Below are positions 46,489 through 62,629 of a DNA stretch of 64,000 bases, piece after piece. The notes below the pieces were generated by a model. It worked only from the letters and a program-made list of their open reading frames with translations. It did not search any database and was not told where the DNA came from. The translations under genes and the position numbers were made by a program. Each line of letters begins with the position of its first letter. Position 1 is the first letter of the stretch. The stretch covers positions 63,674,001 to 63,738,000 of the forward strand of contig NC_086376.1 of NCBI RefSeq assembly GCF_036588685.1, given 5' to 3'. Source of the stretch: Mytilus trossulus (lineage: Eukaryota).

Positions 46489-49233
46489 TTAACTGCTTGA
46501 TAAACGAATTAGGTATTGACAATTCACTTGGAAACTCAACATATACCCTCACGACACTCACCAAAGAGGAAATCCTGGATAACGATAGGTCTGTTCTATG
46601 TTCCTTTGGAATTTCAACCAAAAATGAAGAACTGGATCTTCCATCACTGCATTGGATACCTAAACTACATAAGTGTCCTTACAAACAACGGTATATTGCT
46701 GGGTCTTCCAAGTACTCCACGAAACCTCTTTCTAAATTATTTACATCTATTTTATCAGCAATCAAAGACGGGCTTCAGAGTTATTGTGAAACTGTCTATT
46801 CTAGAGGTGGCGTGAATCAGATGTAGATCCAAATATCTTTTAGAGTACATTCAATCTAACTCTCTTTCATTTTGTAACAGTATTAAAACATTTGACCTTT
46901 CTACTCTTTACACAAGAATTCCACATTCCAAACTTAAAGACGAATTGAAAGAGTTGGTATTGATTTGCTTCATAAAAAAGAATGGCCAACGTAGATATAA
47001 GTATCTTGTTGTAGGGAGGGATAAATCCTACTTTGCAAAGGATCACTCTGAATCAAACAGAAAATTCTCTGAAACTGATATTATCAAGATGCTTGATTTC
47101 TCGATTGACAACATATTTGTTACTGTCGGCATTCCAATGGGAACAAATTGTGCCCCTCTACTTGCCGACTTGTTTCTTTATTATCATGAGGCTTACTTTA
47201 TGCATGAACTTCTAAGGAAGAAAGATAAGAAGTTAGCGATATCCGTTAACTCTACTTTCCGCTATATAGATGATGCTCTTTCACTGAATAAATCAAAATT
47301 TGACTATGTGGAACGCATCTATCCCATCGATCTAGGGATAAAGGATACTACAGACACATTTAAGTCGGCCTCATATCTTGACTTACATCTAGAAATTGAC
47401 AATGAGGGTCGGTTGAAAACAAAACTTTACGACAAAAAAGATGATTTCAGCTTTCCAATTGTGAACTTCCATTTCTTAGTAGCAACATTCCAGCAGTCTC
47501 ACATGAACTGATTTCACATGAGTTTCAAGTATAAGCTCGTTTTAGGTGAATTTACGTGAATTTTACGTGAGATTCACATGAATTTTAATTCAAGTGAAAT
47601 TGATGTGAACGAAATTTGCCTGTGTATAAGAAGATGTGATATGAGTGCAAATGAGACAAATCTCCATCCAATTCACTTTTAAAAAAAGTCAATCATTATA
47701 GGTCAAAATACGATCTTCATCACGGAGCCAAAAGCATTAGTCATGGTCATTAAATTTATAAGCAGAATTCATTTTATGTGATTCAAATTGCTTCTTGACC
47801 ATGAAAGGTGAATAATTTATTATCATAATTAACAAAACCATCATTTCAGGACTTTGAAAATATCTAGAGGATTTCTTGGAAATCTCGAGATATTATATTA
47901 AAGATGAACAGTGTTCACCCTGAGTGATTGCTGGTCACTTCTCACTAGTGGTACGTCCACTCAAGATATAGAGAAAATACAATGCAAGAAATCTATGTGC
48001 AGAGAATTTAAAAAAGTTTCCAATTTTTTATAATCTTTTATTGCTGATTTAACTTCCTAGAGTATTTGCTAAAACAAGAACATGTTTATTATGTATGTTG
48101 TTTCCAATTTCAACCAATTTACTTTAATGTTCGAAATAATTGTCAAAACACAAATTGGAAAGGGATTAATATAAGCTGCAAAACTTGTTTCCCAATCCAC
48201 TATCAACAAATATGTTTAAACTAACACAAAGTATACTAAAAAGTCATCATTTCAGAGCAATAACTCCTTTATCCGTCATCCAATTGTCTAATAGTTTTGG
48301 GTTAATTTTTTTTTTATAGATCTTGTATGGCTGATCAATTCTGCTGTCCATACTTTCTACCTAGCTACCTATCATACCTTTTTCTATAATATCATACCTT
48401 TCCCTGTACATTCAATTAGCAAAAAACATTGTTTTTTTCAAAACATATTCATTTTGGGGCTATCAGTTATCTAGGTTTCATCTAAAAGTAGATAATATTA
48501 GTAATTTTGTAGATTTTGACCATGTTTGCTGTTCACGGTTTTTACCTGCTTTGAATATGAAAAAAAATTGTTATTTTCTAGTAATTCTTGACATGTGTGT
48601 TGACAAACCATAAACCATGGCAGTTAAGTTGTTTGATTGACCAGAGTTAAAAACACAAACTTAATACCATGATGATAAAGTCTGATACTAGTTTAGTTGT
48701 TTTAGAGAAAGATTTTAAAAATAAGCGTCTGTAACAAAAATCGTCCTCTAAGTCATAAATGGGTCAGCCAATTGTTTAGATTGTATAAGAATGTTTGTAA
48801 ATCTTGCATTTCTGGTCATTTTCTGTCTTAACAGTTTTTCTTCTTCATTTGATCTCTGGAAGAGTATTCTCACCTTCACTCATTCCACGTCCTCTGATCT
48901 TTTAAATATACCTTTCAGATAAATTTTTTGTGATGAAAAGCAAAGACTTGAACATTTACCAAAATACACAATTGAAAGGCAACAACTATGCTGGAGTATG
49001 ACCAGATTATGTTGGTGAGAATATCCATTTCAAAGCATATTTGCCTAATTCAATACAAATCTGACAAGAGGAACACCATTAGATGTACATCAGCTATTAA
49101 AATGACATTTCATTTTTACTAATATTGCATTCCCCGAAATTATATATAAGCTATTTATTATATTACTATCCACAACAACAAGTTTATTTGAGTGTGTTTA
49201 ATACAGTATCTTATCATTATAAAATCACAAAAG

Positions 49234-49281: not shown

Positions 49282-49936
49282 CTGCAAATAAATAAAATAT
49301 TTTATTATAACAATAATATTCTGCAGAAAAAACAATCTCCTTGGAGGATGAATTTATCTTAGGTAAATCTGATATTATGTTGTTGAACTGATGTTTATCC
49401 ATGGTTATTATAGTAGATTATACTAGGTATATAGATAAGACACATGGTTTTACACATGGTTTTTTTTTTTTGGCCCTTTATATCTTCCTATTTGGTGTGA
49501 GCCAATGCGCTGTGTTGAAGTCTGTACTTTGACCTATAATGGTTTACTTTTATAAATTATTACTTGGATGGAGAGTTGTCTCATTGGCACTCATACCACA
49601 TCATCCTGTATCTATGTTTAATAAGGTATTTTATTCAGTTGATATAAGAACCCTACATAACAGACCAAAATTCATCTTTTATTTCGTATCTGAATGTTCC
49701 AAATTCGAATAAAAATCTTGCATCAGTGTGATTTCTATCAGAAGCAGCTGCCAGATGAAGACTTTGTCCTGGTGAGAGATGTCATTTTCACATGAATTAG
49801 TTTGTTTGACTGTTTGAAACTTTTCTTTGGTTTTTGAGAACTATTTTATCAGATCAGTTAACTCAGTGTGGAAATCGTTAATTCCAATCTAATTTTATAC
49901 ACATCTCTATTTTGTTTTTATATGAAATCAACATAC

Positions 49937-50069
49937 TTTAATAATATCTAATCCACCAATCAGCTCTCCCTTTACATAGATTTGTGGATATGTTGGCCAG
50001 TTAGAGAATTTCTTCAGACCTTGACGAACATCTTCATCAGATAAAATATCAAATGTATCATATGGCACT
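49937..50069 (-). CDS. GLRX3: GLRX3 exon ([44 protein letters not shown])
   Basis: Second WPTYPQ/GGLD block; tttttgtAG acceptor and GTATGT donor; phase 2-0. Confidence 0.96.
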
Positions 50070-50872
50070 CTACAAAAATAAATACACAACTTTATTCACT
50101 CTGCAAAAATAGATACACAACTTTATTCACTCTATAAAAATAGATACACAACTTTATTACACTACAAAAATAGATATACAACTTTATTCACTCTATAAAA
50201 ATAGATACACAACTTTATTCACTCTACAAAAATAGATCACAACTTTATTTACTCTACAAAAATAGATACACAACTTTATTCACTCTATAAAAATAGATAC
50301 ACAACTTTATTCACTCTACAAAAATAGATACACAACTTTATTTACTCTGCAAAAATAGATACACAACTTTATTCACTCTACAAAAATAGATCACAACTTT
50401 ATTTACTCTACAAAAATAGATACACAACTTTATTCACTCTATAAAAATAGATACACAACTTTATTCACTCTACAAAAATAGATCACAACTTTATTCACTC
50501 TACAAAAATAGATACACAACTTTATTTACTCTGCAAAAATAGATACACAACTTTATTCACTCTATAAAAATAGATACACAACTTTATTTACTCTGCAAAA
50601 ATAGATACACAACTTTATTCACTCTATAAAAATAGATACACAACTTTATTACACTACAAAAATAGATCACAACTGTATTTACTCTACAAAAATAGATACA
50701 CAACTTTATTCACTCTACAAAAATAGATCACAACTGTATTTACTCTACAAAAATAGATACACAACTTTATTCACTTTACAAAAATAGAAACACAACTTTA
50801 TTCAATCTATAAAAATAGATTCACAACTTTATTCAGTCTACAAAAACAGATACACAACTTTATTCACTCTGC
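50066..50872 (-). repeat. 31-bp minisatellite (~26 units) made of the GLRX3 splice acceptor
   Basis: The + strand unit cactctacaaaaatagatacacaactttatt reads AATAAAGTTGTGTATCTATTTTTGTAG|AGTG on the sense strand; the last unit is the real acceptor of exon 49937-50069. Confidence 0.95.
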
Positions 50873-51457
50873 CAAAAAAAATAACATAACATTGTTCATT
50901 ATACAAAAAAAGAAACATAACATTTTTCAACAAGAATGTGTCCATAGTACAAGAATGCCCCACTCGCACTATCCTTTTCTACGATCAGTGGTCCTTGATA
51001 TTGGAATCAAAACTCTAATTTGGCATTAAAAATAGAAATATCATATCATAGGGAATGTGTACTAAGTTTCAAGTTGATTGGACTTCAACTTTATCAAAAA
51101 CAACCTTGACCAAAAACTTAAACCTGAAGCAGGACAGACGTATGAACGAATGAACACACAAACCAAAAAAAGTTAATGACCTTAAGACAAAAAATGTAAG
51201 AGGGGAATAAAAATAGACACATAACATTATTCACTCTGCAAAATTTATAATACATATATTCAATACATTATTGTAAATTACATGTGCTTATTTATATTTC
51301 TTATAATTCTACATAGGACCTGAAATAACTGTAGTTTACCCATAAATATTTTGTTAATTCTACAAGGTATTTTTGTTAAAACCTATCAAGTTACTGCTGT
51401 AACATTCATAATCATTTGAACTTATCCATTAAAAAACCTTTGACCAAAACAGCTTAA

Positions 51458-52026
51458 AGGCATATGAAACCTCAAATTAAATAAAATTATGCATATGGTT
51501 TTTTTTAAATGGATAGCTTTCATTATACAACTTATGTACATGTACATATACTTTTTTCTGAGGAAAATTCTTTTATTTGTCCACATTTAGAAGAAGTTTA
51601 CTTATTCTTAATTGCTTCCTTCCAGGAAGTAATTCACTGACATATTTTCTGTATGCATAGTGACCTTAGTGTGACCCTCCTCGTAAAAATACGGTGATCA
51701 CAATAAGCATGGATCTGTCATTAAAATAAACAATTATCTGATCATTGTATAGAATAAACATGTGCTCAATATCCATGCTTTTTGTTGATTGTTTACTATT
51801 AGGTGACAATCGGTAAACTTCGGTTTCAAAATACGGCATATAATGAGCAGCCATATTTGTTGAATAATAACAGACAGAGAGAGAACAAAATTGACGATTA
51901 TACGATATATTTGTGTAAAAAATTATAAAATTGTGCACAGAGGGCTAAGTTTATGAAATATACATGCATTGGTTCAAGAATTGGATAAACATTATTTTTT
52001 TCACCAGTCACTCGTTTCATATGACT
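51458..52026 (-). mobile_element. Kolobok-like MITE, copy 2 (inverted, in a GLRX3 intron)
   Basis: TTAA|AGGCATATGAAAC ... GTTTCATATGACT|TTAA; interior is the reverse complement of 1627-2189. Confidence 0.85.
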
Positions 52027-52403
52027 TTAATATTTATTGGTATATCATTTCAGATTAAAAAGGGCAATGAGTAATATCATTGTTCATAACGTCAGGCTCC
52101 AAAATAAAAATAATATCACACTAATATTTGAATATCTATTGATCAGGGTATTCTTAATCAATTACAAGGTGTTGGGTATGTTTCCAAAAAAATAACCAAA
52201 ATGATTCACATTCTGAAATGGTTATTGTTCTACATAACTTCTTACTTATCTATAGATATCCATTCAACACTAGTTAAGCATACAAATATTTTTCCTTAAT
52301 ATTTCATTTCCCATGTTTCCAACTAATATTTCCCATTGTTGATACAACTTATTCAACGATGACTGTCTTTTGTCACTTAATTTCTTAATCTTTAAAAAGA
52401 ATA

Positions 52404-52757
52404 CACCTTATCGCTATTTAGTCCATTCCGGGAAAAACAGTCATTTACACAACTTCCTGTTTGGGTCACCGACCGAAAAATAGAGGTCATCAGTAGTGAG
52501 CTGAGGGAGAAAAAACTTTAGAAAGTGATCATCAAGAAACTTTGATATAGTATGATCCACTTTTTTCGAAATTAAAATTGAAGTAAAAACATATTTTGTT
52601 TGAAGTATTTACGGTAGTTTAAACAGGTCTCATTAAAAAGTATCATGCATTTTGAATTGTTTATACAGGGTCCCAGATAGCTTCGAATTCAACTGGATGA
52701 AAAAGTTGTGTAATTTTAGAACTTATCCGGAATGGAATATAAAATAGCGATTAGGTG
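52404..52757. mobile_element. TA-flanked MITE with the same TIR as 27034-27200
   Basis: TA|CACCTTATCGCTATTT ... AAATAGCGATTAGGTG|TA, with a different interior. Confidence 0.85.
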
Positions 52758-52879
52758 TATACTTCTGTCTTCCATTTAACTGTAATATCTGTTTTAGATA
52801 TAAATTTTGCAATGTATCTCAAAGACATGTTGTCATTACCCTTCATTTCAAAATTATATGAGAATTGTGCAACTCTGAG

Positions 52880-54235
52880 TTTAAATGGGGTCATAGTAAT
52901 GTATCTCTGTTATTATATGGGGTCATGGTCATGTAATGTGTTAAGATGGGGGCTTAGTAAATGTATCTCTGTTATTATATGGGGGCTTAGTAAATGTATC
53001 TCTGTTATTATATGGGGTCATGGTAATGTGTTTATCTCTCTTATTATATAGGGTCATGGTCCTGTAATGTGTTTAGATGGGGTCATAACTGTGAGTACTC
53101 TCAAATCGTATTTTCTTGTAAATTCGACCTGTTGATTCTGTTGATAATGCTTTTTTGTTATTTTTTATTTATATGGATCTTGTCTGTACACTAGCATGAC
53201 TAGCTTTGATTATTTGTAATATCTTCAATTTTTCACTTATTCTTACTACATTTGTATAAACTTCAAGATTATAATTGTTTTTTTAAAACCGGTATTTTTC
53301 TAAAGTGAATATTGATTGGTTAAATATTTCTCAGTCATGTCCTGCCATGGCTTTGTTTGAATTTGTTTGTTAGCTTTTTGGTCATGAATGTTTGTCTTTA
53401 ATATTTAATTAAGTGTGCATTTGTATTCAGATATCGCAGATCAAATTTATTCGTTCATTGTGTAATCATACGTTTTTTGATTGAGTTAAGTCTGCCAATT
53501 GATATTTTATCGTGTGTTTTTCTATGTTGTGATGTTATGCTATTGTTTCAGAAAAAGGGAGAAGGTTTGGATCCATTAAAACGTTAAATCCTGCTGCAAA
53601 TGTTTGCACCTGTCCTAAGTCAGGAATCTGATGTACAGTAGTTGTCGTTTGTTTATGTTATATATACGTGTTTCTCGTTTTGTTTATATAGATTAGACCG
53701 TTGGTTTTCCCTTTAGAATGGTTTTACACTAGTAATTTTGGGGCCCTTTATAGCTTGTTGTTCGGTGTGAGCCAAGGCTCTGGGTTGAAGGCCATACTTT
53801 AACCTATAATGGTTTACTTTTTAAATTGTTATTTGGATGGAGAGTTGTCTCATTGGCACTCACACCACATCTTCCTATATCTATCATAGTAATGTATCTC
53901 TGTTATTATATGGGATCATGGTCATGTAATGTGTTTATCTCTGTTATTAAATGGGGTCATGGTCATGTAATTAGATGGGGGCTTAGTAAATGTATCTCTG
54001 TTATTAATACTTATTATATGGGGTCATGGTCATGTAATTTGTTTAGATGGGGTCATAGTAATGTATCTCTGTTATTAAATGGGGTCATGGTCATGTAATG
54101 TGTTTAGATGGGGGCTTAGTAAATGTATCTCTGTTATTAATACTTATTATATGGGGTCATGGCCATGTAATGTGTTTAGATGGGGTCATATTAATGTATC
54201 TCTGTTATTGAATGGGGTTATGGTCATGTAATGTG
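52880..54235. repeat. Intronic satellite (atggggtcatggtcatgtaatgtg / atgtatctctgttatta), split by the family A insertion
   Basis: Repeats at 52880-53087 and 53884-54235. Confidence 0.9.
53088..53883 (+). mobile_element. Dispersed repeat family A, longest copy, inserted into a satellite
   Basis: TCATA direct repeats (53083-53087, 53884-53888); fixed end ...cattggcactcacaccacatcttcctatatcta. Other copies at 12981-13263, 20728-20915 (inverted), 31036-31123, 40541-40668, 47627-47730, 49471-49614. Confidence 0.8.
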
Positions 54236-54586
54236 TCCTGAAGTAAGGTCATATATGTTTAATTGATTTCTAACATAGTCATTTAAGCTTTTTTTACATT
54301 CATAGGCATTTGCACATTTCTTCTCTATTGAATATCATGTAGGTTAGGGATAATATTCACAGGCATTTTTACACATTTATTCTTTTTTGAATATCATGTA
54401 GGTTAGGGAAGAAGACAAACCAATTAAATATGCTGATTGAAAAGTATGCAAGCAGTGTTAATTAAAGATCAGCTTAAATTGTTTGGAGTGGGCATTCAGA
54501 TTGAAACTGTCATATAAAAACTTAATCATAACAATATTATCTAACTCAAAGTTAAATCATTTTTTTTATTTTTTCTATTATCATAC

Positions 54587-54697
54587 CCAATTTCAGATAG
54601 TATTCCAATTGTCTGTTTACTAAAACCACATCTAGGTGTCTCAGGATCTCCTTTCATAAACAACATCACATTAGACCTTTTTATAAGTTTCTTAAGT
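54587..54697 (-). CDS. GLRX3: GLRX3 exon, Grx domain 2 ([37 protein letters not shown])
   Basis: Second CGFS motif; cAG/GTATGA boundaries; phase 2-2. Confidence 0.95.
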
Positions 54698-55928
54698 CTG
54701 CAAAGAGAAGAAAATGTTTTATGATATACATGATAAAAAAAAATATAGTGCTATGCCTACAAAATGAAGAAAAGATTAAAAACTTCCCCAAACCCAAGTC
54801 AACGTTCATAAGTTCATACATGCCTATAGCTATGGGTACAAAATATGAAAATATTACAAGGGCAAAACAATAGAATAATTAGAACACACTCAGACTATTG
54901 AAAAACAAGACAGAGTACTAAAATCAAATAATACACCATGAACTCAAATATTATGTTCACAAAATTGTGTCCATTTGGGTATATATGTTAGTTTCAATAA
55001 TGAAGACATTAAGGTGCATTCACTTTATTATTACATCAATATATAATTGATTTTAGAAGTCCAATAAATTATTTTTGAAAATAAAGTTATCATTTAAACT
55101 ATATGTGTAATTATGCTCTGCAAAGGAAAAAAAGGCTGTAGGAGTACAAAATTAAGAGTAAGAGGTATTTAAATAGGGGATCCCTTGAATTTAAAATTAA
55201 ATTCTACATCATTCAACCATTACATGCATGATGAAATGTACAAGCCAAGTAATTTATTATGTACATGTATGAATAATATGTTTAAATTCCATGAGAAACA
55301 ATCAAAATCTCTTCCAAATTCTAAAATCAAATTCACAAGGGGGCATTTCAATTGAATTACAAACTATTAGAAGCATTACTCACTAAATAGTTAATGTAGA
55401 AACTGACCAAATTTCTTTTAATAATATGAATCAATTACTATAAAAACAGGGTCAAATGAGGTGTCTCTTGTCTGATGACCATACAAACCTAATATAAACC
55501 TAATAAAAACAATTGATGTAGGCTATATTTAATAACTTATTTAATCAAAATACTCCCTCTGAATAATCCAGATTTATCAAAATATACTTATAAAATTCCT
55601 TCAGCTGAAAAACTCTTACTAAATTTAGTGATATTTGTTATTTTTAGCTTGATATTGTAATTATCTATGGATATCTATATACATATGTGCCTCATTATAA
55701 AAGAGAAAACAGTTCTTGACATTTTTAACTCCTCTTAAGGTGTTAGCATTTATTATTGGTATAATACAAATTGTTTGTAGTGGAAATTCAGATTTCAATT
55801 TATAGACCATATTATAGTCTCACTGTGACTCTGTATTAAAGAACAGAAATTGTTTGTGAAGATTTTGGCTTTGGTGATTGATGTTTGTTATATTCTGATG
55901 ATTCCTGTTATTAACCTCTATATGAAAA

Positions 55929-56115
55929 AGAAGATGTGGTATGATTGCCAATGAGACAACTATCCACAAAAGACCAAAATGACACAGACATTACCAACTA
56001 TAGATCTCCATACGGCCTTCAACAATGAGCAAATCTCATACAGCATAGTCAGCTATAAAAGGCCCCGATAAGACATTGTAAAACAATTCAAACGAGAAAA
56101 CTAATGCCTACTTTA
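55929..56115 (-). mobile_element. Family A-related subfamily (aagaagatgtggtatgattgccaatgagacaac...)
   Basis: Near identical to 29461-29655; more diverged copies at 12525-12720, 17020-17210, 32110-32270 (inverted). Confidence 0.8.
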
Positions 56116-56151
56116 TATATTATTAACAATAAACTTTGTCTATAGTTGTAC

Positions 56152-56296
56152 CTGTCTTCTAATTTTTCTTGTTGAGGAAGTTGTGATTCTAATTCTCCAG
56201 TCTCGACCAATTCTTTAACGATATCCAACCCTCCAAGTAACTCTCCATTAGCATATAACTGGGGATATGTAGGCCAATTAGAAAACTTCTTTAAAC
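56152..56296 (-). CDS. GLRX3: GLRX3 exon ([48 protein letters not shown])
   Basis: WPTYPQLY and GGLD motifs (inside ORF 56088..56324); phase 1-2. Confidence 0.96.
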
Positions 56297-57197
56297 CTGA
56301 ATTTTTAAAACAAAATTTCATCATATAAATGTGTCAGTACAAAACCAATAGCCTTGACTCTATCTTTTTTTAGTTAAGGCACATATCCTGCATATAGCAT
56401 CAATCTGAAATACAGATCCATTCATAACAGAAAGTAGAAGGAAGCTAGTGTTGTCAGGTCCTTGTATGCTAAGCATGGACACAGGATATGTATTTGAATC
56501 GGATTGAGGTAGAATAATTTATAATTCACTCTGTATTGTAATAACAATATTAATTGTAACTTGCTCATTTTGTCACTTTATCGAACTAACTTTTTATAAT
56601 CTGATTTTTTTTTTACATCAGTTTTTAGGTTAGACATATTTATCTATAGTGGATTGGGAAACTTTTGCAACTTATATTAACCCCTTTTCACTTTGTTGGT
56701 TGAGAGTGCTGCCTTTGGTTAGTTTTTAAACATATTTATTTATAGTGGATTGGGAAACAAGTTTTGCAACTTATATTAATCCCTTTCCACTTTGTGGGTG
56801 CGAGTGCTGTCTTGAACCTGTAAGAAATATGTCTTTCTCTAAATCTACAAGCCTTAGGGTGTCTTTAACCTGTAAGAAATATGTCTCTCTCTAAACACTG
56901 TCAGCCATTTGTTGTAACTTCCGATGGACTATCAAGGTTTCCTTAAGACCATACTCCCAAATGGTGTGAAGGGAGAGCCGAAAATTGAGTTCCAAAATTT
57001 TCATCCCTATGGTTGCGTTCATGTTGCTCATTCCTTAGTTTTTCTTGTTGTTGTTTTGTATGCTGTTTATTTTTTGCTTTAATTTTGGGCTTATGATTTG
57101 AATGTCCCTTTGGTACCTTTTGCTTCTCTTTTAAATCATTTTTTCACTTATCCCTGCTGTGTAATTTACTTATGGTAGAAGTTAGTATTGACCATAC

Positions 57198-60346: not shown

Positions 60347-61651
60347 CTGAAAGAAAAAAAATAGGATATCACAAAACATACAACTTATATGTTCTGTTAA
60401 CTGCAGTGAAAGCTGATAATCATGGTCATTTTACTCATTCATAGATCAGTTGAATGATTTATGTTAATAGTAAAAAGAATAGTCAAAACGTTTTATCCTT
60501 TCAAACCATATGAGTTCATTTAGTTATTTGTACAGTCCATGTCACTTAATATACAAATGATATACTAGCTGTTGTTAAATGTACAAATATATAGAGCAAA
60601 AGCATTGCCTAAAATAATTGATTGTCAGTAACTACAAAATATACTCAAATATTTTAAGGCAATAGTTATACTTTACATATGTATATATGATTATTATTTC
60701 CAAGCATGTACAAGTCAAATAGTCAAGATTTTGCATATGTTTGCAATTTTAAAGAATTTCATTACTGTTTGACTGATCATGAAAAAGGTTTGTATATATT
60801 TTAACCATATTAGCATTAATTGTTTAGTACATACATTGTATATTCAACATTTAAATCAGAAAATCTGACAGTATACAAAACGTATGATTTTAGGCCTAAA
60901 TTGGTTAAAAAAATCTTTGAACTTATAAAAAATAAAGATATGGTGTGATTAACAATGAGACAACCAGACATTCCAGAGATAAAAAGACGTACAGGCAGCA
61001 AGCAATAATGAACATACATTTTTTTTTGTAACCTATTCATCTATTTTCATTCCTTTTGGCAAATATTGGAACTAACCAACTAATGGCTCCCACTGAGTAC
61101 CTTACTTGGCACCATTCAGAAAATGAGAAACCATATATATGTCCTTGAAAAAGAAATAACTGTAAACCAGTCAGAACATTATTTCGTACATTGTTGGGTT
61201 TTTTTCACATTTCACTTTACCATGTTTACATGTGCAATAAGAATTGTTTTAAAAATGTGTTTCAAGAGCAATAACTCTAATCAGACAAATTCAACAAAAT
61301 GAAGACTAAGTTCATGTAGATAAAAAATCTGAATCTAGATAATTTTAGCAATTTATAATAATATAACACTTATAACAAGTAACTCCAAAGACAATTGTGG
61401 CCAAGTTTGGTTCAAATTGGCTCAGTAGTTTTATAGAAGATTTTTGTTAAAGTTTAAAAGGCGAACAACAGATGATGGACACCAAGTAATTCGAATAGCT
61501 TATAGGGTACAGTATTTGACATGTTTTAGGGGGAAAAAATCCAATTCACCAAAGTTAAAATTGACATCTATCATTGTCTATAACATGTATTTTTTATGGC
61601 AAACAACTATCAAATTAAACATGATGTTAACAAATAAATTAAGTGATGTAC

Positions 61652-61766
61652 CTTCAAAAACACAACATTGACAAATTCTGTTTCTTTGCAGAGTTCCTCT
61701 AGAACCTCATTCATCTGTTTACACTGTGGAGCCCATAGAGCTGAGAAATGAACAACAACCAGCTGG
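61652..61766 (-). CDS. GLRX3: Glutaredoxin-3 (PICOT) exon, Trx-like domain ([38 protein letters not shown])
   Basis: WAPQC motif typical of GLRX3; tAG acceptor and GTAC donor; 115 nt. The upstream first exon was not found in the window. Confidence 0.93.
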
Positions 61767-62629
61767 CTACAACGTTTAAAGAAAATTCATATCATGTATG
61801 GAGTCTATTTATAAAGTATCATGAATACTAAAATATAAAATAAGTCCAAAGTTACATTTTGAACATGATGGAGAGAATTTCTACAGCTTTTCTGGCAGAA
61901 CAGCTGGAGGATGTCAGAGTAATCTCAGACCATGTACCCCCATGTTCTATTTATAGCCATGTTGGCCATCTTGGTTGGCAGTCAGGTCCATTGGACACAT
62001 TTTTAAAACAATATAATCAGTTCATGTACATGTAGCCCAATGATAAAGGAAGTAATAGTGTCCAAGATTGGATACATTTGGCAAAAAGGCAAACAGTTTC
62101 AGACAAATATCAGAGGAGAAGAATTTAACAGACAATTACATGGATGACAAAGGAAGATGGGCGGCAAGTGATGAGCATACATTGTAGCTATTAAACTTTA
62201 GCCTTTGGTAGATGTTGGTCCCAGTGACTCAAAAGGCTTTTTTCTGAAATTTAAAGCAAATCATTAGTAGGGAGGTTGCGAATGCAATTATAGTAACATA
62301 ATGATTCTTGTGACGGCAAAAATAAAAGGTTTTATCCAACTTCAGTTTGAAATATATTGTAGTTTTCTTAAATTATATTGATATTCCAAAGGGGGGGGGA
62401 TCCATATAAGAGCCTCATTGCAATTATGCAGATAGATTGCTTGCAGTTCTTAACCCTTTTGATATATTTGGCCTGAAATTGACAAATAGCCCAAAAGGCA
62501 AAATATGATATCTACATGATCTAAGCGGTCATGACTTTTGGACTACTTGACCGATTTCAAAAATTTGAGCACTAATTAATTTCTTTTTTTTTGTGCTCAT
62601 CAGAATAATGCAATTTTATCCACTTTCAC

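What the first reader, a model, noticed from the sequence alone, without database searches (positions are those of the whole stretch)
50066..50872. Minisatellite of ~26 copies of GLRX3's own 3' splice site, nearly all with AATAAA and most with an in-frame stop
Seen: on the sense strand the 31-nt unit after each AG reads A GTG AAT AAA GTT GTG TAT CTA TTT TTG TAG. It holds a T-tract plus YAG acceptor, the first 4 nt of the exon and a canonical poly(A) hexamer. In the phase-2 frame the next unit's TAG is a stop. Variants GTAG/GCAG/ATAG keep YAG. The productive acceptor is the last of the array and has TTTATTTTT where the others have TCTATTTTT. Inference: the spliceosome must skip about 25 decoys. 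Using one would create an alternative last exon (acceptor, stop, poly(A) signal) ending ...[12 protein letters not shown], truncating the second CGFS Grx domain, or would trigger NMD. Repeat-length variation could then tune this Fe-S chaperone. A stray unit at ~51205-51245, beyond an insertion, suggests the array is not recent.
Basis: partly seen in the sequence, partly recalled or inferred. Interest (0 to 1): 0.8.

Follow-up and report, generated by a model that had tools for sequence, protein, structure and literature searches.

The report
Splice-acceptor "mirage" minisatellite in GLRX3 intron
A mollusc glutaredoxin-3 gene has its own intron-exon edge copied 26 times in tandem inside the intron, a repeat type already described, and the assembled RNA is spliced only at the genuine last copy.

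Summary
On the minus strand, 26 head-to-tail units of 30-31 nt (window 50070-50871) end exactly at the 3' splice site of a glutaredoxin exon (49936-50069). 25 units end in YAG and 24 carry AATAAA. All 25 decoy AGs lead to a stop within 10-33 codons. The periodicity runs 4 nt into the exon. The unit occurs nowhere else in the 1.30-Gb assembly. Two degenerate units (50872-50929) and one more beyond a high-copy transposon insertion (51207-51243) show an older array core.

The functional reading is not supported. In three RNA runs from three studies, the one contig across this intron joins 54587 to 50069. No RNA contig lies on 50178-50833. These are assembled contigs, so rare decoy use or intronic polyadenylation cannot be excluded.

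The structure is a known kind. "Mirage" minisatellites duplicate intron-exon boundaries in amphioxus, including an acceptor-side case. Human F7, CBS, IFI6, LMNB2 and PDGF are the donor-side mirror. In the cases studied, splicing stays at or next to the authentic site. Earlier notes of this scan report many such arrays in other genes of this same genome. Verdict: a new member of a known kind, most likely a tolerated by-product of tandem duplication. Repeat-length polymorphism and orthologous loci stayed untested.

The parts
50070..50871 (-). Young block of the minisatellite: 26 units of 30-31 nt. Each unit is a copy of the last 27 nt of the intron plus the first 4 nt of the exon (AGTG AATAAA GTTGTGTATCTATTTTT GYAG). 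There are 25 decoy YAG sites, and the genuine acceptor is the last copy (AG at 50071-50070).
   Evidence: Units differ from the consensus at 0-3 positions. All 19 hits of the unit pattern at 3 or fewer mismatches in the 1.30-Gb assembly fall here, against a control of 0.
50872..50929 (-). Two degenerate, older units. They match the consensus at 22 and 23 of 31 positions. They share the AATG/TTATG states with the isolated unit beyond the insertion.
50930..51170 (.). Insertion of a high-copy interspersed repeat that splits the old part of the array. It is not part of the repeat. The 36 nt at 51171-51206 are neither array-like nor matched by the 40 scored copies.
   Evidence: 5520 first-look candidates. 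40 were scored, one being the query's own place at 100%; the other 39 are 85-91% identical and all end at query position 275 (= 50930); word depth up to millions in the DNA run over 50834-51161, with loose ends at 50929.
51207..51243 (-). Isolated old unit, preceded by ..TTGCAG, on the far side of the insertion.
   Evidence: 89% over 37 nt, E 4.6e-4. (25 of 31 matches to the consensus).
49936..50069 (-). Exon encoding the C-terminal half of the second glutaredoxin domain (VPYDTFDIL...GGLDIIK). It is not the last exon, because the RNA contigs run on 7-13 letters past 49936.
   Evidence: (Pfam Glutaredoxin, E 2.5e-11). (contigs lie on 49936-50069).
54587..54700 (-). Upstream exon with the CGFS active site (..[22 protein letters not shown]). 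It ends in phase 2 at 54587, and the donor GT is at 54586-54585. By sequence the 5' edge is probably 54697 (cag|a); the RNA contigs lie up to 54700.
   Evidence: joint 50069/54587, skipped ends CT..AC on the + strand.

Best explanation
This is a locus-specific 'mirage' (junction-spanning) minisatellite.

Origin (inferred). A 31-bp piece of DNA covering the last 27 nt of the intron and the first 4 nt of the exon was duplicated in tandem. Slippage or unequal exchange between the two AGTG microhomologies would do this. The piece was then amplified in at least two phases. An old phase left three degenerate units, later split by a transposon. A young phase produced 26 near-identical units through duplications of several units at a time.

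Consequence (shown). Every unit carries the full acceptor signal: a U-tract, a YAG, and a possible UGA-type branch site 26 nt upstream.

Outcome (shown at the level of assembled contigs). The mRNA is made by splicing the donor at 54587 to the exon-edge copy at 50069.

Why that copy is chosen (inferred). It is the only copy followed by real exon sequence and by the exon's own 5' splice site 134 nt downstream. Exon definition, or preference for the copy proximal to the exon, therefore selects it. This mirrors the donor-side F7 array, where only the exon-proximal copy is used although the others are functional. The -12 C-to-T change in the last unit may help slightly.

Fate of decoy use (inferred). 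Any use of a decoy puts a stop within 10-33 codons in a non-terminal exon, so such products would be unproductive and probably degraded.

The AATAAA hexamers are passengers of the copied unit. The array is most likely a tolerated by-product of DNA duplication and not a regulatory device.
For: Array anatomy and the 4-nt overlap with the exon.

Unique to this locus in the assembly: the 401-nt BLAST hits only this place. 19 of 19 pattern hits fall here with a control of 0. The exon plus its flank is single-copy.

Old core: degenerate units lie on both sides of a transposon copy that is 85-91% identical to the 39 other copies scored, out of 5520 candidates.

Canonical splicing: the joint 50069/54587 (skips 4517, GT..AG on the minus strand) is seen in 1 contig in each of 3 RNA runs from 3 studies, with sides of 114, 114 and 63 letters. 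Depth is zero on 50178-50833 in all three. In X12 and X19 the depth of bins 49850-50013 and 50014-50177 equals what the single spliced contig gives (my arithmetic).

Stops after every decoy.

Known class with the same behaviour, from passages read:
- PMC3087553: amphioxus mirages, including BflGb6 built from the 3' end of an intron plus the 5' part of exon 2; regular splicing is not disturbed.
- PMC3902484: Adh, TnC and PGBD5 mirages yield no aberrant mRNAs.
- PMC1557585: in the F7 37-bp VNTR only the exon-proximal copy is used; two extra sites are used in CBS and IFI6.
Against: All RNA evidence is from Logan contigs, which drop rare variants and cannot show RNA ends. 281 further joints were not listed. 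A 31-nt repeat is hard to assemble with short words. The DNA run X9 also shows almost no depth on the array, so a hole proves little.

The duplication mechanism, the role of exon definition and the NMD fate are inferences. No raw read, 3'-end data, genotype or orthologous locus was available.

Why junction arrays are so frequent in this genome (earlier scan notes, untested here) is not explained by plain slippage.
Confidence: 0.8

Rival explanations
1. One reading: the array is a working decoy or termination device. On this view the spliceosome uses decoy acceptors or the AATAAA signals to make a truncated alternative last exon or NMD substrates, and repeat length tunes GLRX3 output.
For: Each unit has a U-tract, a YAG, and an AATAAA followed by GU/U-rich sequence. 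There are 24 hexamers in 0.8 kb, against 6 in the other 3715 nt of the intron and about 1.5 per kb expected. All decoys give early stops. Two extra repeat sites are used in human CBS and IFI6 (PMC1557585, Introduction passage).
Against: 3 of 3 RNA runs show only the 54587-to-50069 joint. None has contig letters on 50178-50833. A terminal exon made from one unit would be only about 30 nt long. The exon is not terminal. In described mirages and in F7, splicing is normal. There are no data on length variation.
Confidence: 0.07
2. Splicing noise: decoys next to the exon are used at a low but measurable rate (about 1% or more). This would give PTC transcripts cleared by NMD, which is a small cost and has no function.
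For: Four decoy units are identical to the genuine site from -31 to +4 except at -12. Pseudo-sites in F7 are functional when the authentic one is mutated, and in CBS and IFI6 the two nearest are used (PMC1557585).
Against: It was not seen in the contigs, but contigs cannot show rare forms. It is therefore untested, not contradicted.
Confidence: 0.3
3. The array is part of a dispersed satellite or transposon, and the exon merely borrowed its end as an acceptor.
For: The intron holds several high-copy repeats (depth).
Against: 19 of 19 pattern hits and all 5 BLAST matches in the 1.30-Gb assembly lie in this array. The unit includes 4 nt of coding sequence. An ORF from another organism reads ..CRV.Y.TFDIL at the same point, which fits a YAG|AGT acceptor at a conserved intron position (P0006; weak evidence, from the protein only).
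Confidence: 0.02
4. Assembly artefact: the array is over-expanded or mis-assembled.
For: Short-read contigs of the DNA run X9 barely cover it. An amphioxus mirage was reported as mis-assembled in a draft genome (PMC3087553, legend of Additional file 4).
Against: The units have 14 distinct sequences in a structured order with 30/31-nt variants. That is unlike a collapsed or stuttered artefact. Both flanks are continuous and single-copy. X9 has some depth on the variant units at 50670-50833.
Confidence: 0.03

Closest known systems
Amphioxus 'mirage' minisatellites (Adh3, globin BflGb6/BflGb9, TnC, PGBD5)
   Same: They are tandem, minisatellite-like duplications of an intron-exon boundary. BflGb6 copies the 3' end of an intron with its acceptor plus the start of exon 2. 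Many units keep AG/GT signals, and regular splicing is not disturbed. Adh3 units are 10-72 bp. Edge copies are excluded from homogenisation. (PMC3087553 and PMC3902484, passages read.)
   Different: The host here is a mollusc, not a cephalochordate. The unit is short (31 nt) with only 4 exonic nt, against 150-160 bp in BflGb6. The copy number is higher (26 plus 3 old units, against 3-6). Length or somatic instability, shown for Adh3 and BflGb6, was not tested here. The founding paper (Canestro 2002, PMC117041) is not held, and its content is known only through citing papers.
Human F7 intron 7 37-bp VNTR
   Same: Its monomer is 4 bp of exon plus 33 bp of intron, so the splice site is reiterated. 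Only the exon-proximal copy is used physiologically, although the others are functional. (PMC1557585: abstract and passages of the Introduction, Results and Discussion read.)
   Different: It is on the donor side (5' splice sites), has 5-9 copies, is a human gene, and was dissected with 50 constructs. Nothing experimental exists here.
Human CBS 31-bp VNTR, IFI6 (6-16) minisatellite, LMNB2 100-bp and PDGF 81-bp intron repeats
   Same: These are minisatellites whose first monomer spans an exon-intron boundary, with 10-26 copies. In LMNB2 and PDGF only the authentic site is used. (All as listed in the Introduction of PMC1557585; the original papers were not read.)
   Different: All are on the donor side. 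In CBS and IFI6 the two nearest pseudo-sites are also used, which was not seen here at contig level.

Membership tests
Mirage / junction-spanning minisatellite | Head-to-tail tandem array of minisatellite-sized units | tested here: met
   TRF gives period 31, 28.1 copies, 89% matches. 26 parsed units.
Mirage / junction-spanning minisatellite | The unit spans an exon-intron boundary and so reiterates the splice signal plus some exon letters | tested here: met
   The unit is 27 intron nt including YAG plus AGTG, the first 4 nt of the exon. The chance of the 4-nt continuation is about 0.003. The junction position is fixed by RNA contigs.
Mirage / junction-spanning minisatellite | The genuine junction is the edge copy of the array | tested here: met
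   The joint 54587/50069 uses the last unit's AG. The array ends at 50070.
Mirage / junction-spanning minisatellite | Regular splicing of the host mRNA is retained | tested here: met
   One spliced contig in each of 3 RNA runs, and none on the array. This is contig level only, so rare forms are not excluded.
Mirage / junction-spanning minisatellite | Length polymorphism or instability between alleles | not tested
The assembly holds one copy of the locus.
GLRX3 / PICOT (Trx-like domain plus monothiol CGFS glutaredoxin domains) | N-terminal thioredoxin-like domain of the GLRX3 type | tested here: met
   The exon peptide 61646-61786 holds WAPQC. Its best solved relatives are 2diy 'Thioredoxin-like protein 2' and 2wz9 'Glutaredoxin-3', E 3-5e-9. 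The Pfam Thioredoxin hit on a second exon is below the cut-off (E 0.003).
GLRX3 / PICOT (Trx-like domain plus monothiol CGFS glutaredoxin domains) | Two CGFS-type glutaredoxin domains | tested here: inconclusive
   One CGFS motif was found (54544-54750). Two exons carry the C-terminal Grx half: 49937-50068 at E 2.5e-11, and 56091-56324 at E 8e-4, below the cut-off. The first domain's active-site exon was not located. The joined protein was deliberately not built.
Alternative last exon / intronic polyadenylation site | Transcripts that end with poly(A) inside the intron, downstream of a used acceptor | tested here: not met
   No RNA contig letters lie on 50178-50833 in 3 runs, and table 6 lists no begin/end places. 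Contigs cannot show RNA ends, so this is weak negative evidence.

The most novel reading that the evidence does not exclude
The array may not be neutral. On this reading, 25 complete acceptor-plus-AAUAAA modules ahead of the genuine site act as a kinetic sink. They would divert a length-dependent fraction of GLRX3 pre-mRNA into NMD or premature termination.

More broadly, this mussel genome may have a specific mutational process tied to splice junctions that keeps generating such arrays. The exon-edge copy, kept intact by selection, would serve as the template that re-seeds them. The two-phase history seen here would fit that: an old core split by a transposon, then a young burst matching the exon-edge copy to within 1 nt.
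Probability: 0.07. Interest if true: 0.6.

Novelty: new member of a known kind. Interest (0 to 1): 0.25.

Why it matters
The array is a clean natural test of 3' splice-site choice. There are 26 nearly identical acceptor modules in a row, four of them identical to the genuine one from -31 to +4 except at one base. The assembled mRNA still uses only the copy that touches the exon. The well-studied cases (F7, CBS, IFI6) are on the donor side, and acceptor-side arrays of this size are little studied. Together with the earlier notes of this scan, it adds to the picture that junction minisatellites are common in this mollusc genome, and the origin of that abundance is an open question. For GLRX3 itself nothing suggests a functional consequence.

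Tried and rejected
- Dispersed satellite or transposon origin: rejected.
A metagenome scan with the 53-aa exon ORF gave 80 loci. None of the 80 holds anything within 9 mismatches of the unit. The one I read (L027) runs on without an intron there, like a cDNA, and the rest were not read, so no comparative dating was possible. The exon-ORF protein search (547 hits, 120 listed, all 120 with PF00462) confirmed only the domain.
- A hint that the relative 'organism C' may have a different or shorter array: X9 contig 23 aligns only to 50110 and has 105 further unaligned letters. This could not be followed up.
- RNA structure that would hide the decoys. The last 291 nt fold at -53.4 kcal/mol with z -2.29, and 3 of 200 shuffles fold as well. 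These are weak AU helices from the CTAT..ATAG palindrome, so I do not think this is a mechanism.
- Rfam on 49800-54800: 0 matches at gathering score.
- Recursive splicing. After a decoy AG the sequence reads A|GTGAAT, so re-splicing would leave an extra A each round and shift the frame. Rejected by reading the sequence.
- NAGNAG use of the second AG (TAGAG|). The joint lies at 50069, not 50067.
- A script test of array self-identity at shifts of 25-519 nt printed no shift above 80%, because 30- and 31-nt units drift out of register. The multi-unit duplications rest (95% identity at an offset of 246 nt, 90% at 492 nt) and on the order of unit types.
- Literature. No paper holds 'minisatellite', 'Mytilus' and 'splice site' together (0 papers). 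Searches found no other acceptor-side case beyond amphioxus. Additional files 4-6 of PMC3087553 (the BflGb6 mirage alignment and trees) could bear on the comparison and were not seen. The Lang and Spritz duplication experiments are known to me only through the Discussion passage of PMC1557585.

Full report
**What is there.**
Read on the minus strand, window 50871-50070 is a head-to-tail array that ends exactly at the AG of a 3' splice site. TRF gives 50066-50929, period 31, 28.1 copies, 89% matches and score 1362. It is by far the strongest array among the 13 TRF rows of the whole window; the next scores 532.

Parsing unit by unit gives 26 units:
- 19 are 31 nt and 7 are 30 nt, in 14 distinct sequences.
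- The consensus is AGTGAATAAAGTTGTGTATCTATTTTTGTAG.
- 25 of 26 end in YAG, and one ends TAA.
- 24 of 26 hold AATAAA.
- The units differ from the consensus at 0-3 positions.
- The last unit is the only one reading TATTTATTTTT instead of TATCTATTTTT, a C-to-T change at -12 from the junction.

The window contains no N.

**The gene.**
- The exon that follows (49936-50069) encodes [44 protein letters not shown]. It hits Pfam Glutaredoxin at E 2.5e-11.
- The upstream exon ends ..[17 protein letters not shown] with ATT GG|GTATGA at 54587, which is phase 2.
- Further upstream lie a second Grx C-terminal half (56091-56324, E 8e-4, below the cut-off) and thioredoxin-like exons.
- One of these holds WAPQC. 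Its best solved relatives are human 'Thioredoxin-like protein 2' (2diy) and 'Glutaredoxin-3' (2wz9), at E 3-5e-9.

The label GLRX3/PICOT is therefore reasonable. I did not locate the first domain's active-site exon. I searched the model exon by exon and left the joined step out.

**The unit spans the junction.**
The periodicity continues 4 nt into the exon: AGTG, then the exon reads CCAT where a unit would read AATA. The chance of that continuation from base composition is about 0.003. Each unit is therefore a copy of 27 intron nt plus 4 exon nt. This is the shape expected from a tandem duplication between two AGTG microhomologies 31 nt apart (inference).

**Locus-specific.**
- In the 1.30-Gb assembly, all 19 matches of the unit at 3 or fewer mismatches lie in this array. 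The reversed-pattern control gives 0.
- A 401-nt BLAST finds only this place.
- The exon with its flank is single-copy; the other 40 matches cover only an interspersed repeat in the downstream intron.

It is not a dispersed satellite or a transposon-borne repeat.

**History.**
- Upstream of the 26 units lie two degenerate units (50872-50929), matching the consensus at 22 and 23 of 31 positions.
- Next comes a 241-nt member of a high-copy repeat family (50930-51170). It has 5520 first-look candidates. 40 were scored, one being the query's own place; the other 39 are 85-91% identical. Its depth reaches millions in the DNA run.
- Beyond it lies one more unit (51207-51243), matching at 25 of 31 positions.
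- The three old units share two states (AATG for AAAG, and TTATG for TTGTG) that none of the 26 young units has.

So an older array was split by a transposon that has itself aged. A younger burst then produced the 26 units. That burst involved blocks of several units. The array matches itself at 95% identity when offset by 246 nt, and at 90% when offset by 492 nt. Runs of unit types also recur. The genuine acceptor unit belongs to the young type, with 1 difference.

**Coding and poly(A) consequences.**
Reading from the phase-2 donor into each of the 25 decoy AGs gives a stop within 10-33 codons, and 14 of the 25 stop at the next TAG. None reaches the genuine exon in frame.

AATAAA occurs 24 times in the array. 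It occurs 6 times in the other 3715 nt of the intron, which is 1.6 per kb. About 1.5 per kb is expected, and the window outside the array has 1.4 per kb. The hexamers are copies of one ancestral hexamer, not independent signals.

**RNA evidence.**
All 24 runs offered were Logan contigs, and none was raw reads. I laid three RNA runs from three studies (X12, whose RNA label is a guess, plus X19 and X21) and one DNA run of a relative (X9) on 49850-54750 at 90% likeness.

- Each RNA run has one contig joining 50069 to 54587. It skips 4517 letters with CT..AC ends on the + strand, i.e. GT..AG on the gene strand, and the sides are 114, 114 and 63 letters.
- The contigs run on 7-13 letters past 49936, so the exon is not terminal.
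- All three RNA runs have zero depth on 50178-50833.
- In X12 and X19, the depth of the two bins over the exon equals exactly what the single spliced contig contributes (my arithmetic). No RNA contig letters therefore lie on the first decoy units either.
- No begin/end places were listed.

Against reading too much into this:
- Contigs drop rare variants and cannot show RNA ends.
- 281 further joints were not listed.
- The DNA run X9 is also nearly blank on the array (6.44 on 50670-50833 only). A 31-nt repeat is evidently poorly represented in these contigs.
- X9 contig 23 aligns only up to 50110 and has 105 further letters that do not fit. This hints that the relative's array differs, and I could not follow it up.

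**How it most likely works.**
- Shown: the copies carry the acceptor signal, and the assembled mRNA uses the exon-edge copy.
- Inferred, why that copy: each unit could in principle provide a branch site (UGA, 26 nt upstream of its AG), a U-tract and an AG. Only the last copy is followed by exon sequence and by the exon's 5' splice site 134 nt downstream, so exon definition selects it. The -12 C-to-T change may add a little.
- Inferred, the fate of errors: occasional decoy use would give products with premature stops.

This mirrors the F7 intron-7 array. There the pseudo-sites are functional but only the exon-proximal copy is used (PMC1557585; abstract and passages read).

**Comparison with what is known.**
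- Minisatellites whose edge monomer spans an exon-intron boundary are described for human F7 (37 bp, made of 4 exon bp plus 33 intron bp), IFI6, CBS (31 bp), LMNB2 and PDGF. All of these are on the donor side (PMC1557585, Introduction).
- In amphioxus the same thing is called a 'mirage'. Examples are Adh3 (units of 10-72 bp), TnC, PGBD5 and the globins.
- BflGb6 copies the 3' end of an intron with its acceptor plus the start of exon 2.
- The founding paper (PMC117041) is not held.

The present array meets the four defining features I could test. Length polymorphism was not tested.

I found no paper combining minisatellite, Mytilus and splice site. After I had found the term in the literature, the scan's own notes showed that the same class has been reported in many other genes of this same genome. 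One of those reports is a 57-copy acceptor array in a kinase gene. Those are unchecked AI notes. They agree with my reading, and they add that the type is frequent here.

**Verdict.**
This is a new member of a known kind. It is of modest interest as a natural 26-fold acceptor competition. The main open question is why this genome makes so many such arrays.

Noticed in passing
window 50930-51170: A member of a very abundant interspersed repeat. It has 5520 first-look candidates in the assembly, and the 39 other copies scored are 85-91% identical. It is also deep in the RNA-run contigs. It is inserted into the old part of the array. The 36 nt next to it (51171-51206) match neither the array nor the 40 scored copies.
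   Followed up: partly
window 53458-53949 (and 51490-52145, 52310-52800): Other stretches of the same intron have word depths up to millions in the DNA run, with many rearranged joints. They are therefore high-copy repeats. 53936-54236 and 52881-53057 are tandem arrays with related units (TTAGATGGGGTCATAGTAA..). Rfam finds no family in 49800-54800 at gathering score.
   Followed up: partly
window 46497-47511 (+): ORFs of 109 and 188 aa have reverse-transcriptase-like wording (..FRYIDDALSL..), suggesting a decayed retroelement just downstream of the GLRX3 exon. They were not searched.
   Followed up: no
window 49445-49640 (about 430-626 nt downstream of the acceptor, minus strand): Another interspersed repeat in the downstream intron. 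It has 3540 first-look candidates, and the 40 other copies scored are 82-89% identical.
   Followed up: no
window 49881-50110 (DNA run X9, contig record 23): A relative's 1005-nt contig matches the exon and only the first 41 nt of the array. It then continues for 105 letters that do not fit the window. The array may be different or shorter in that species.
   Followed up: no
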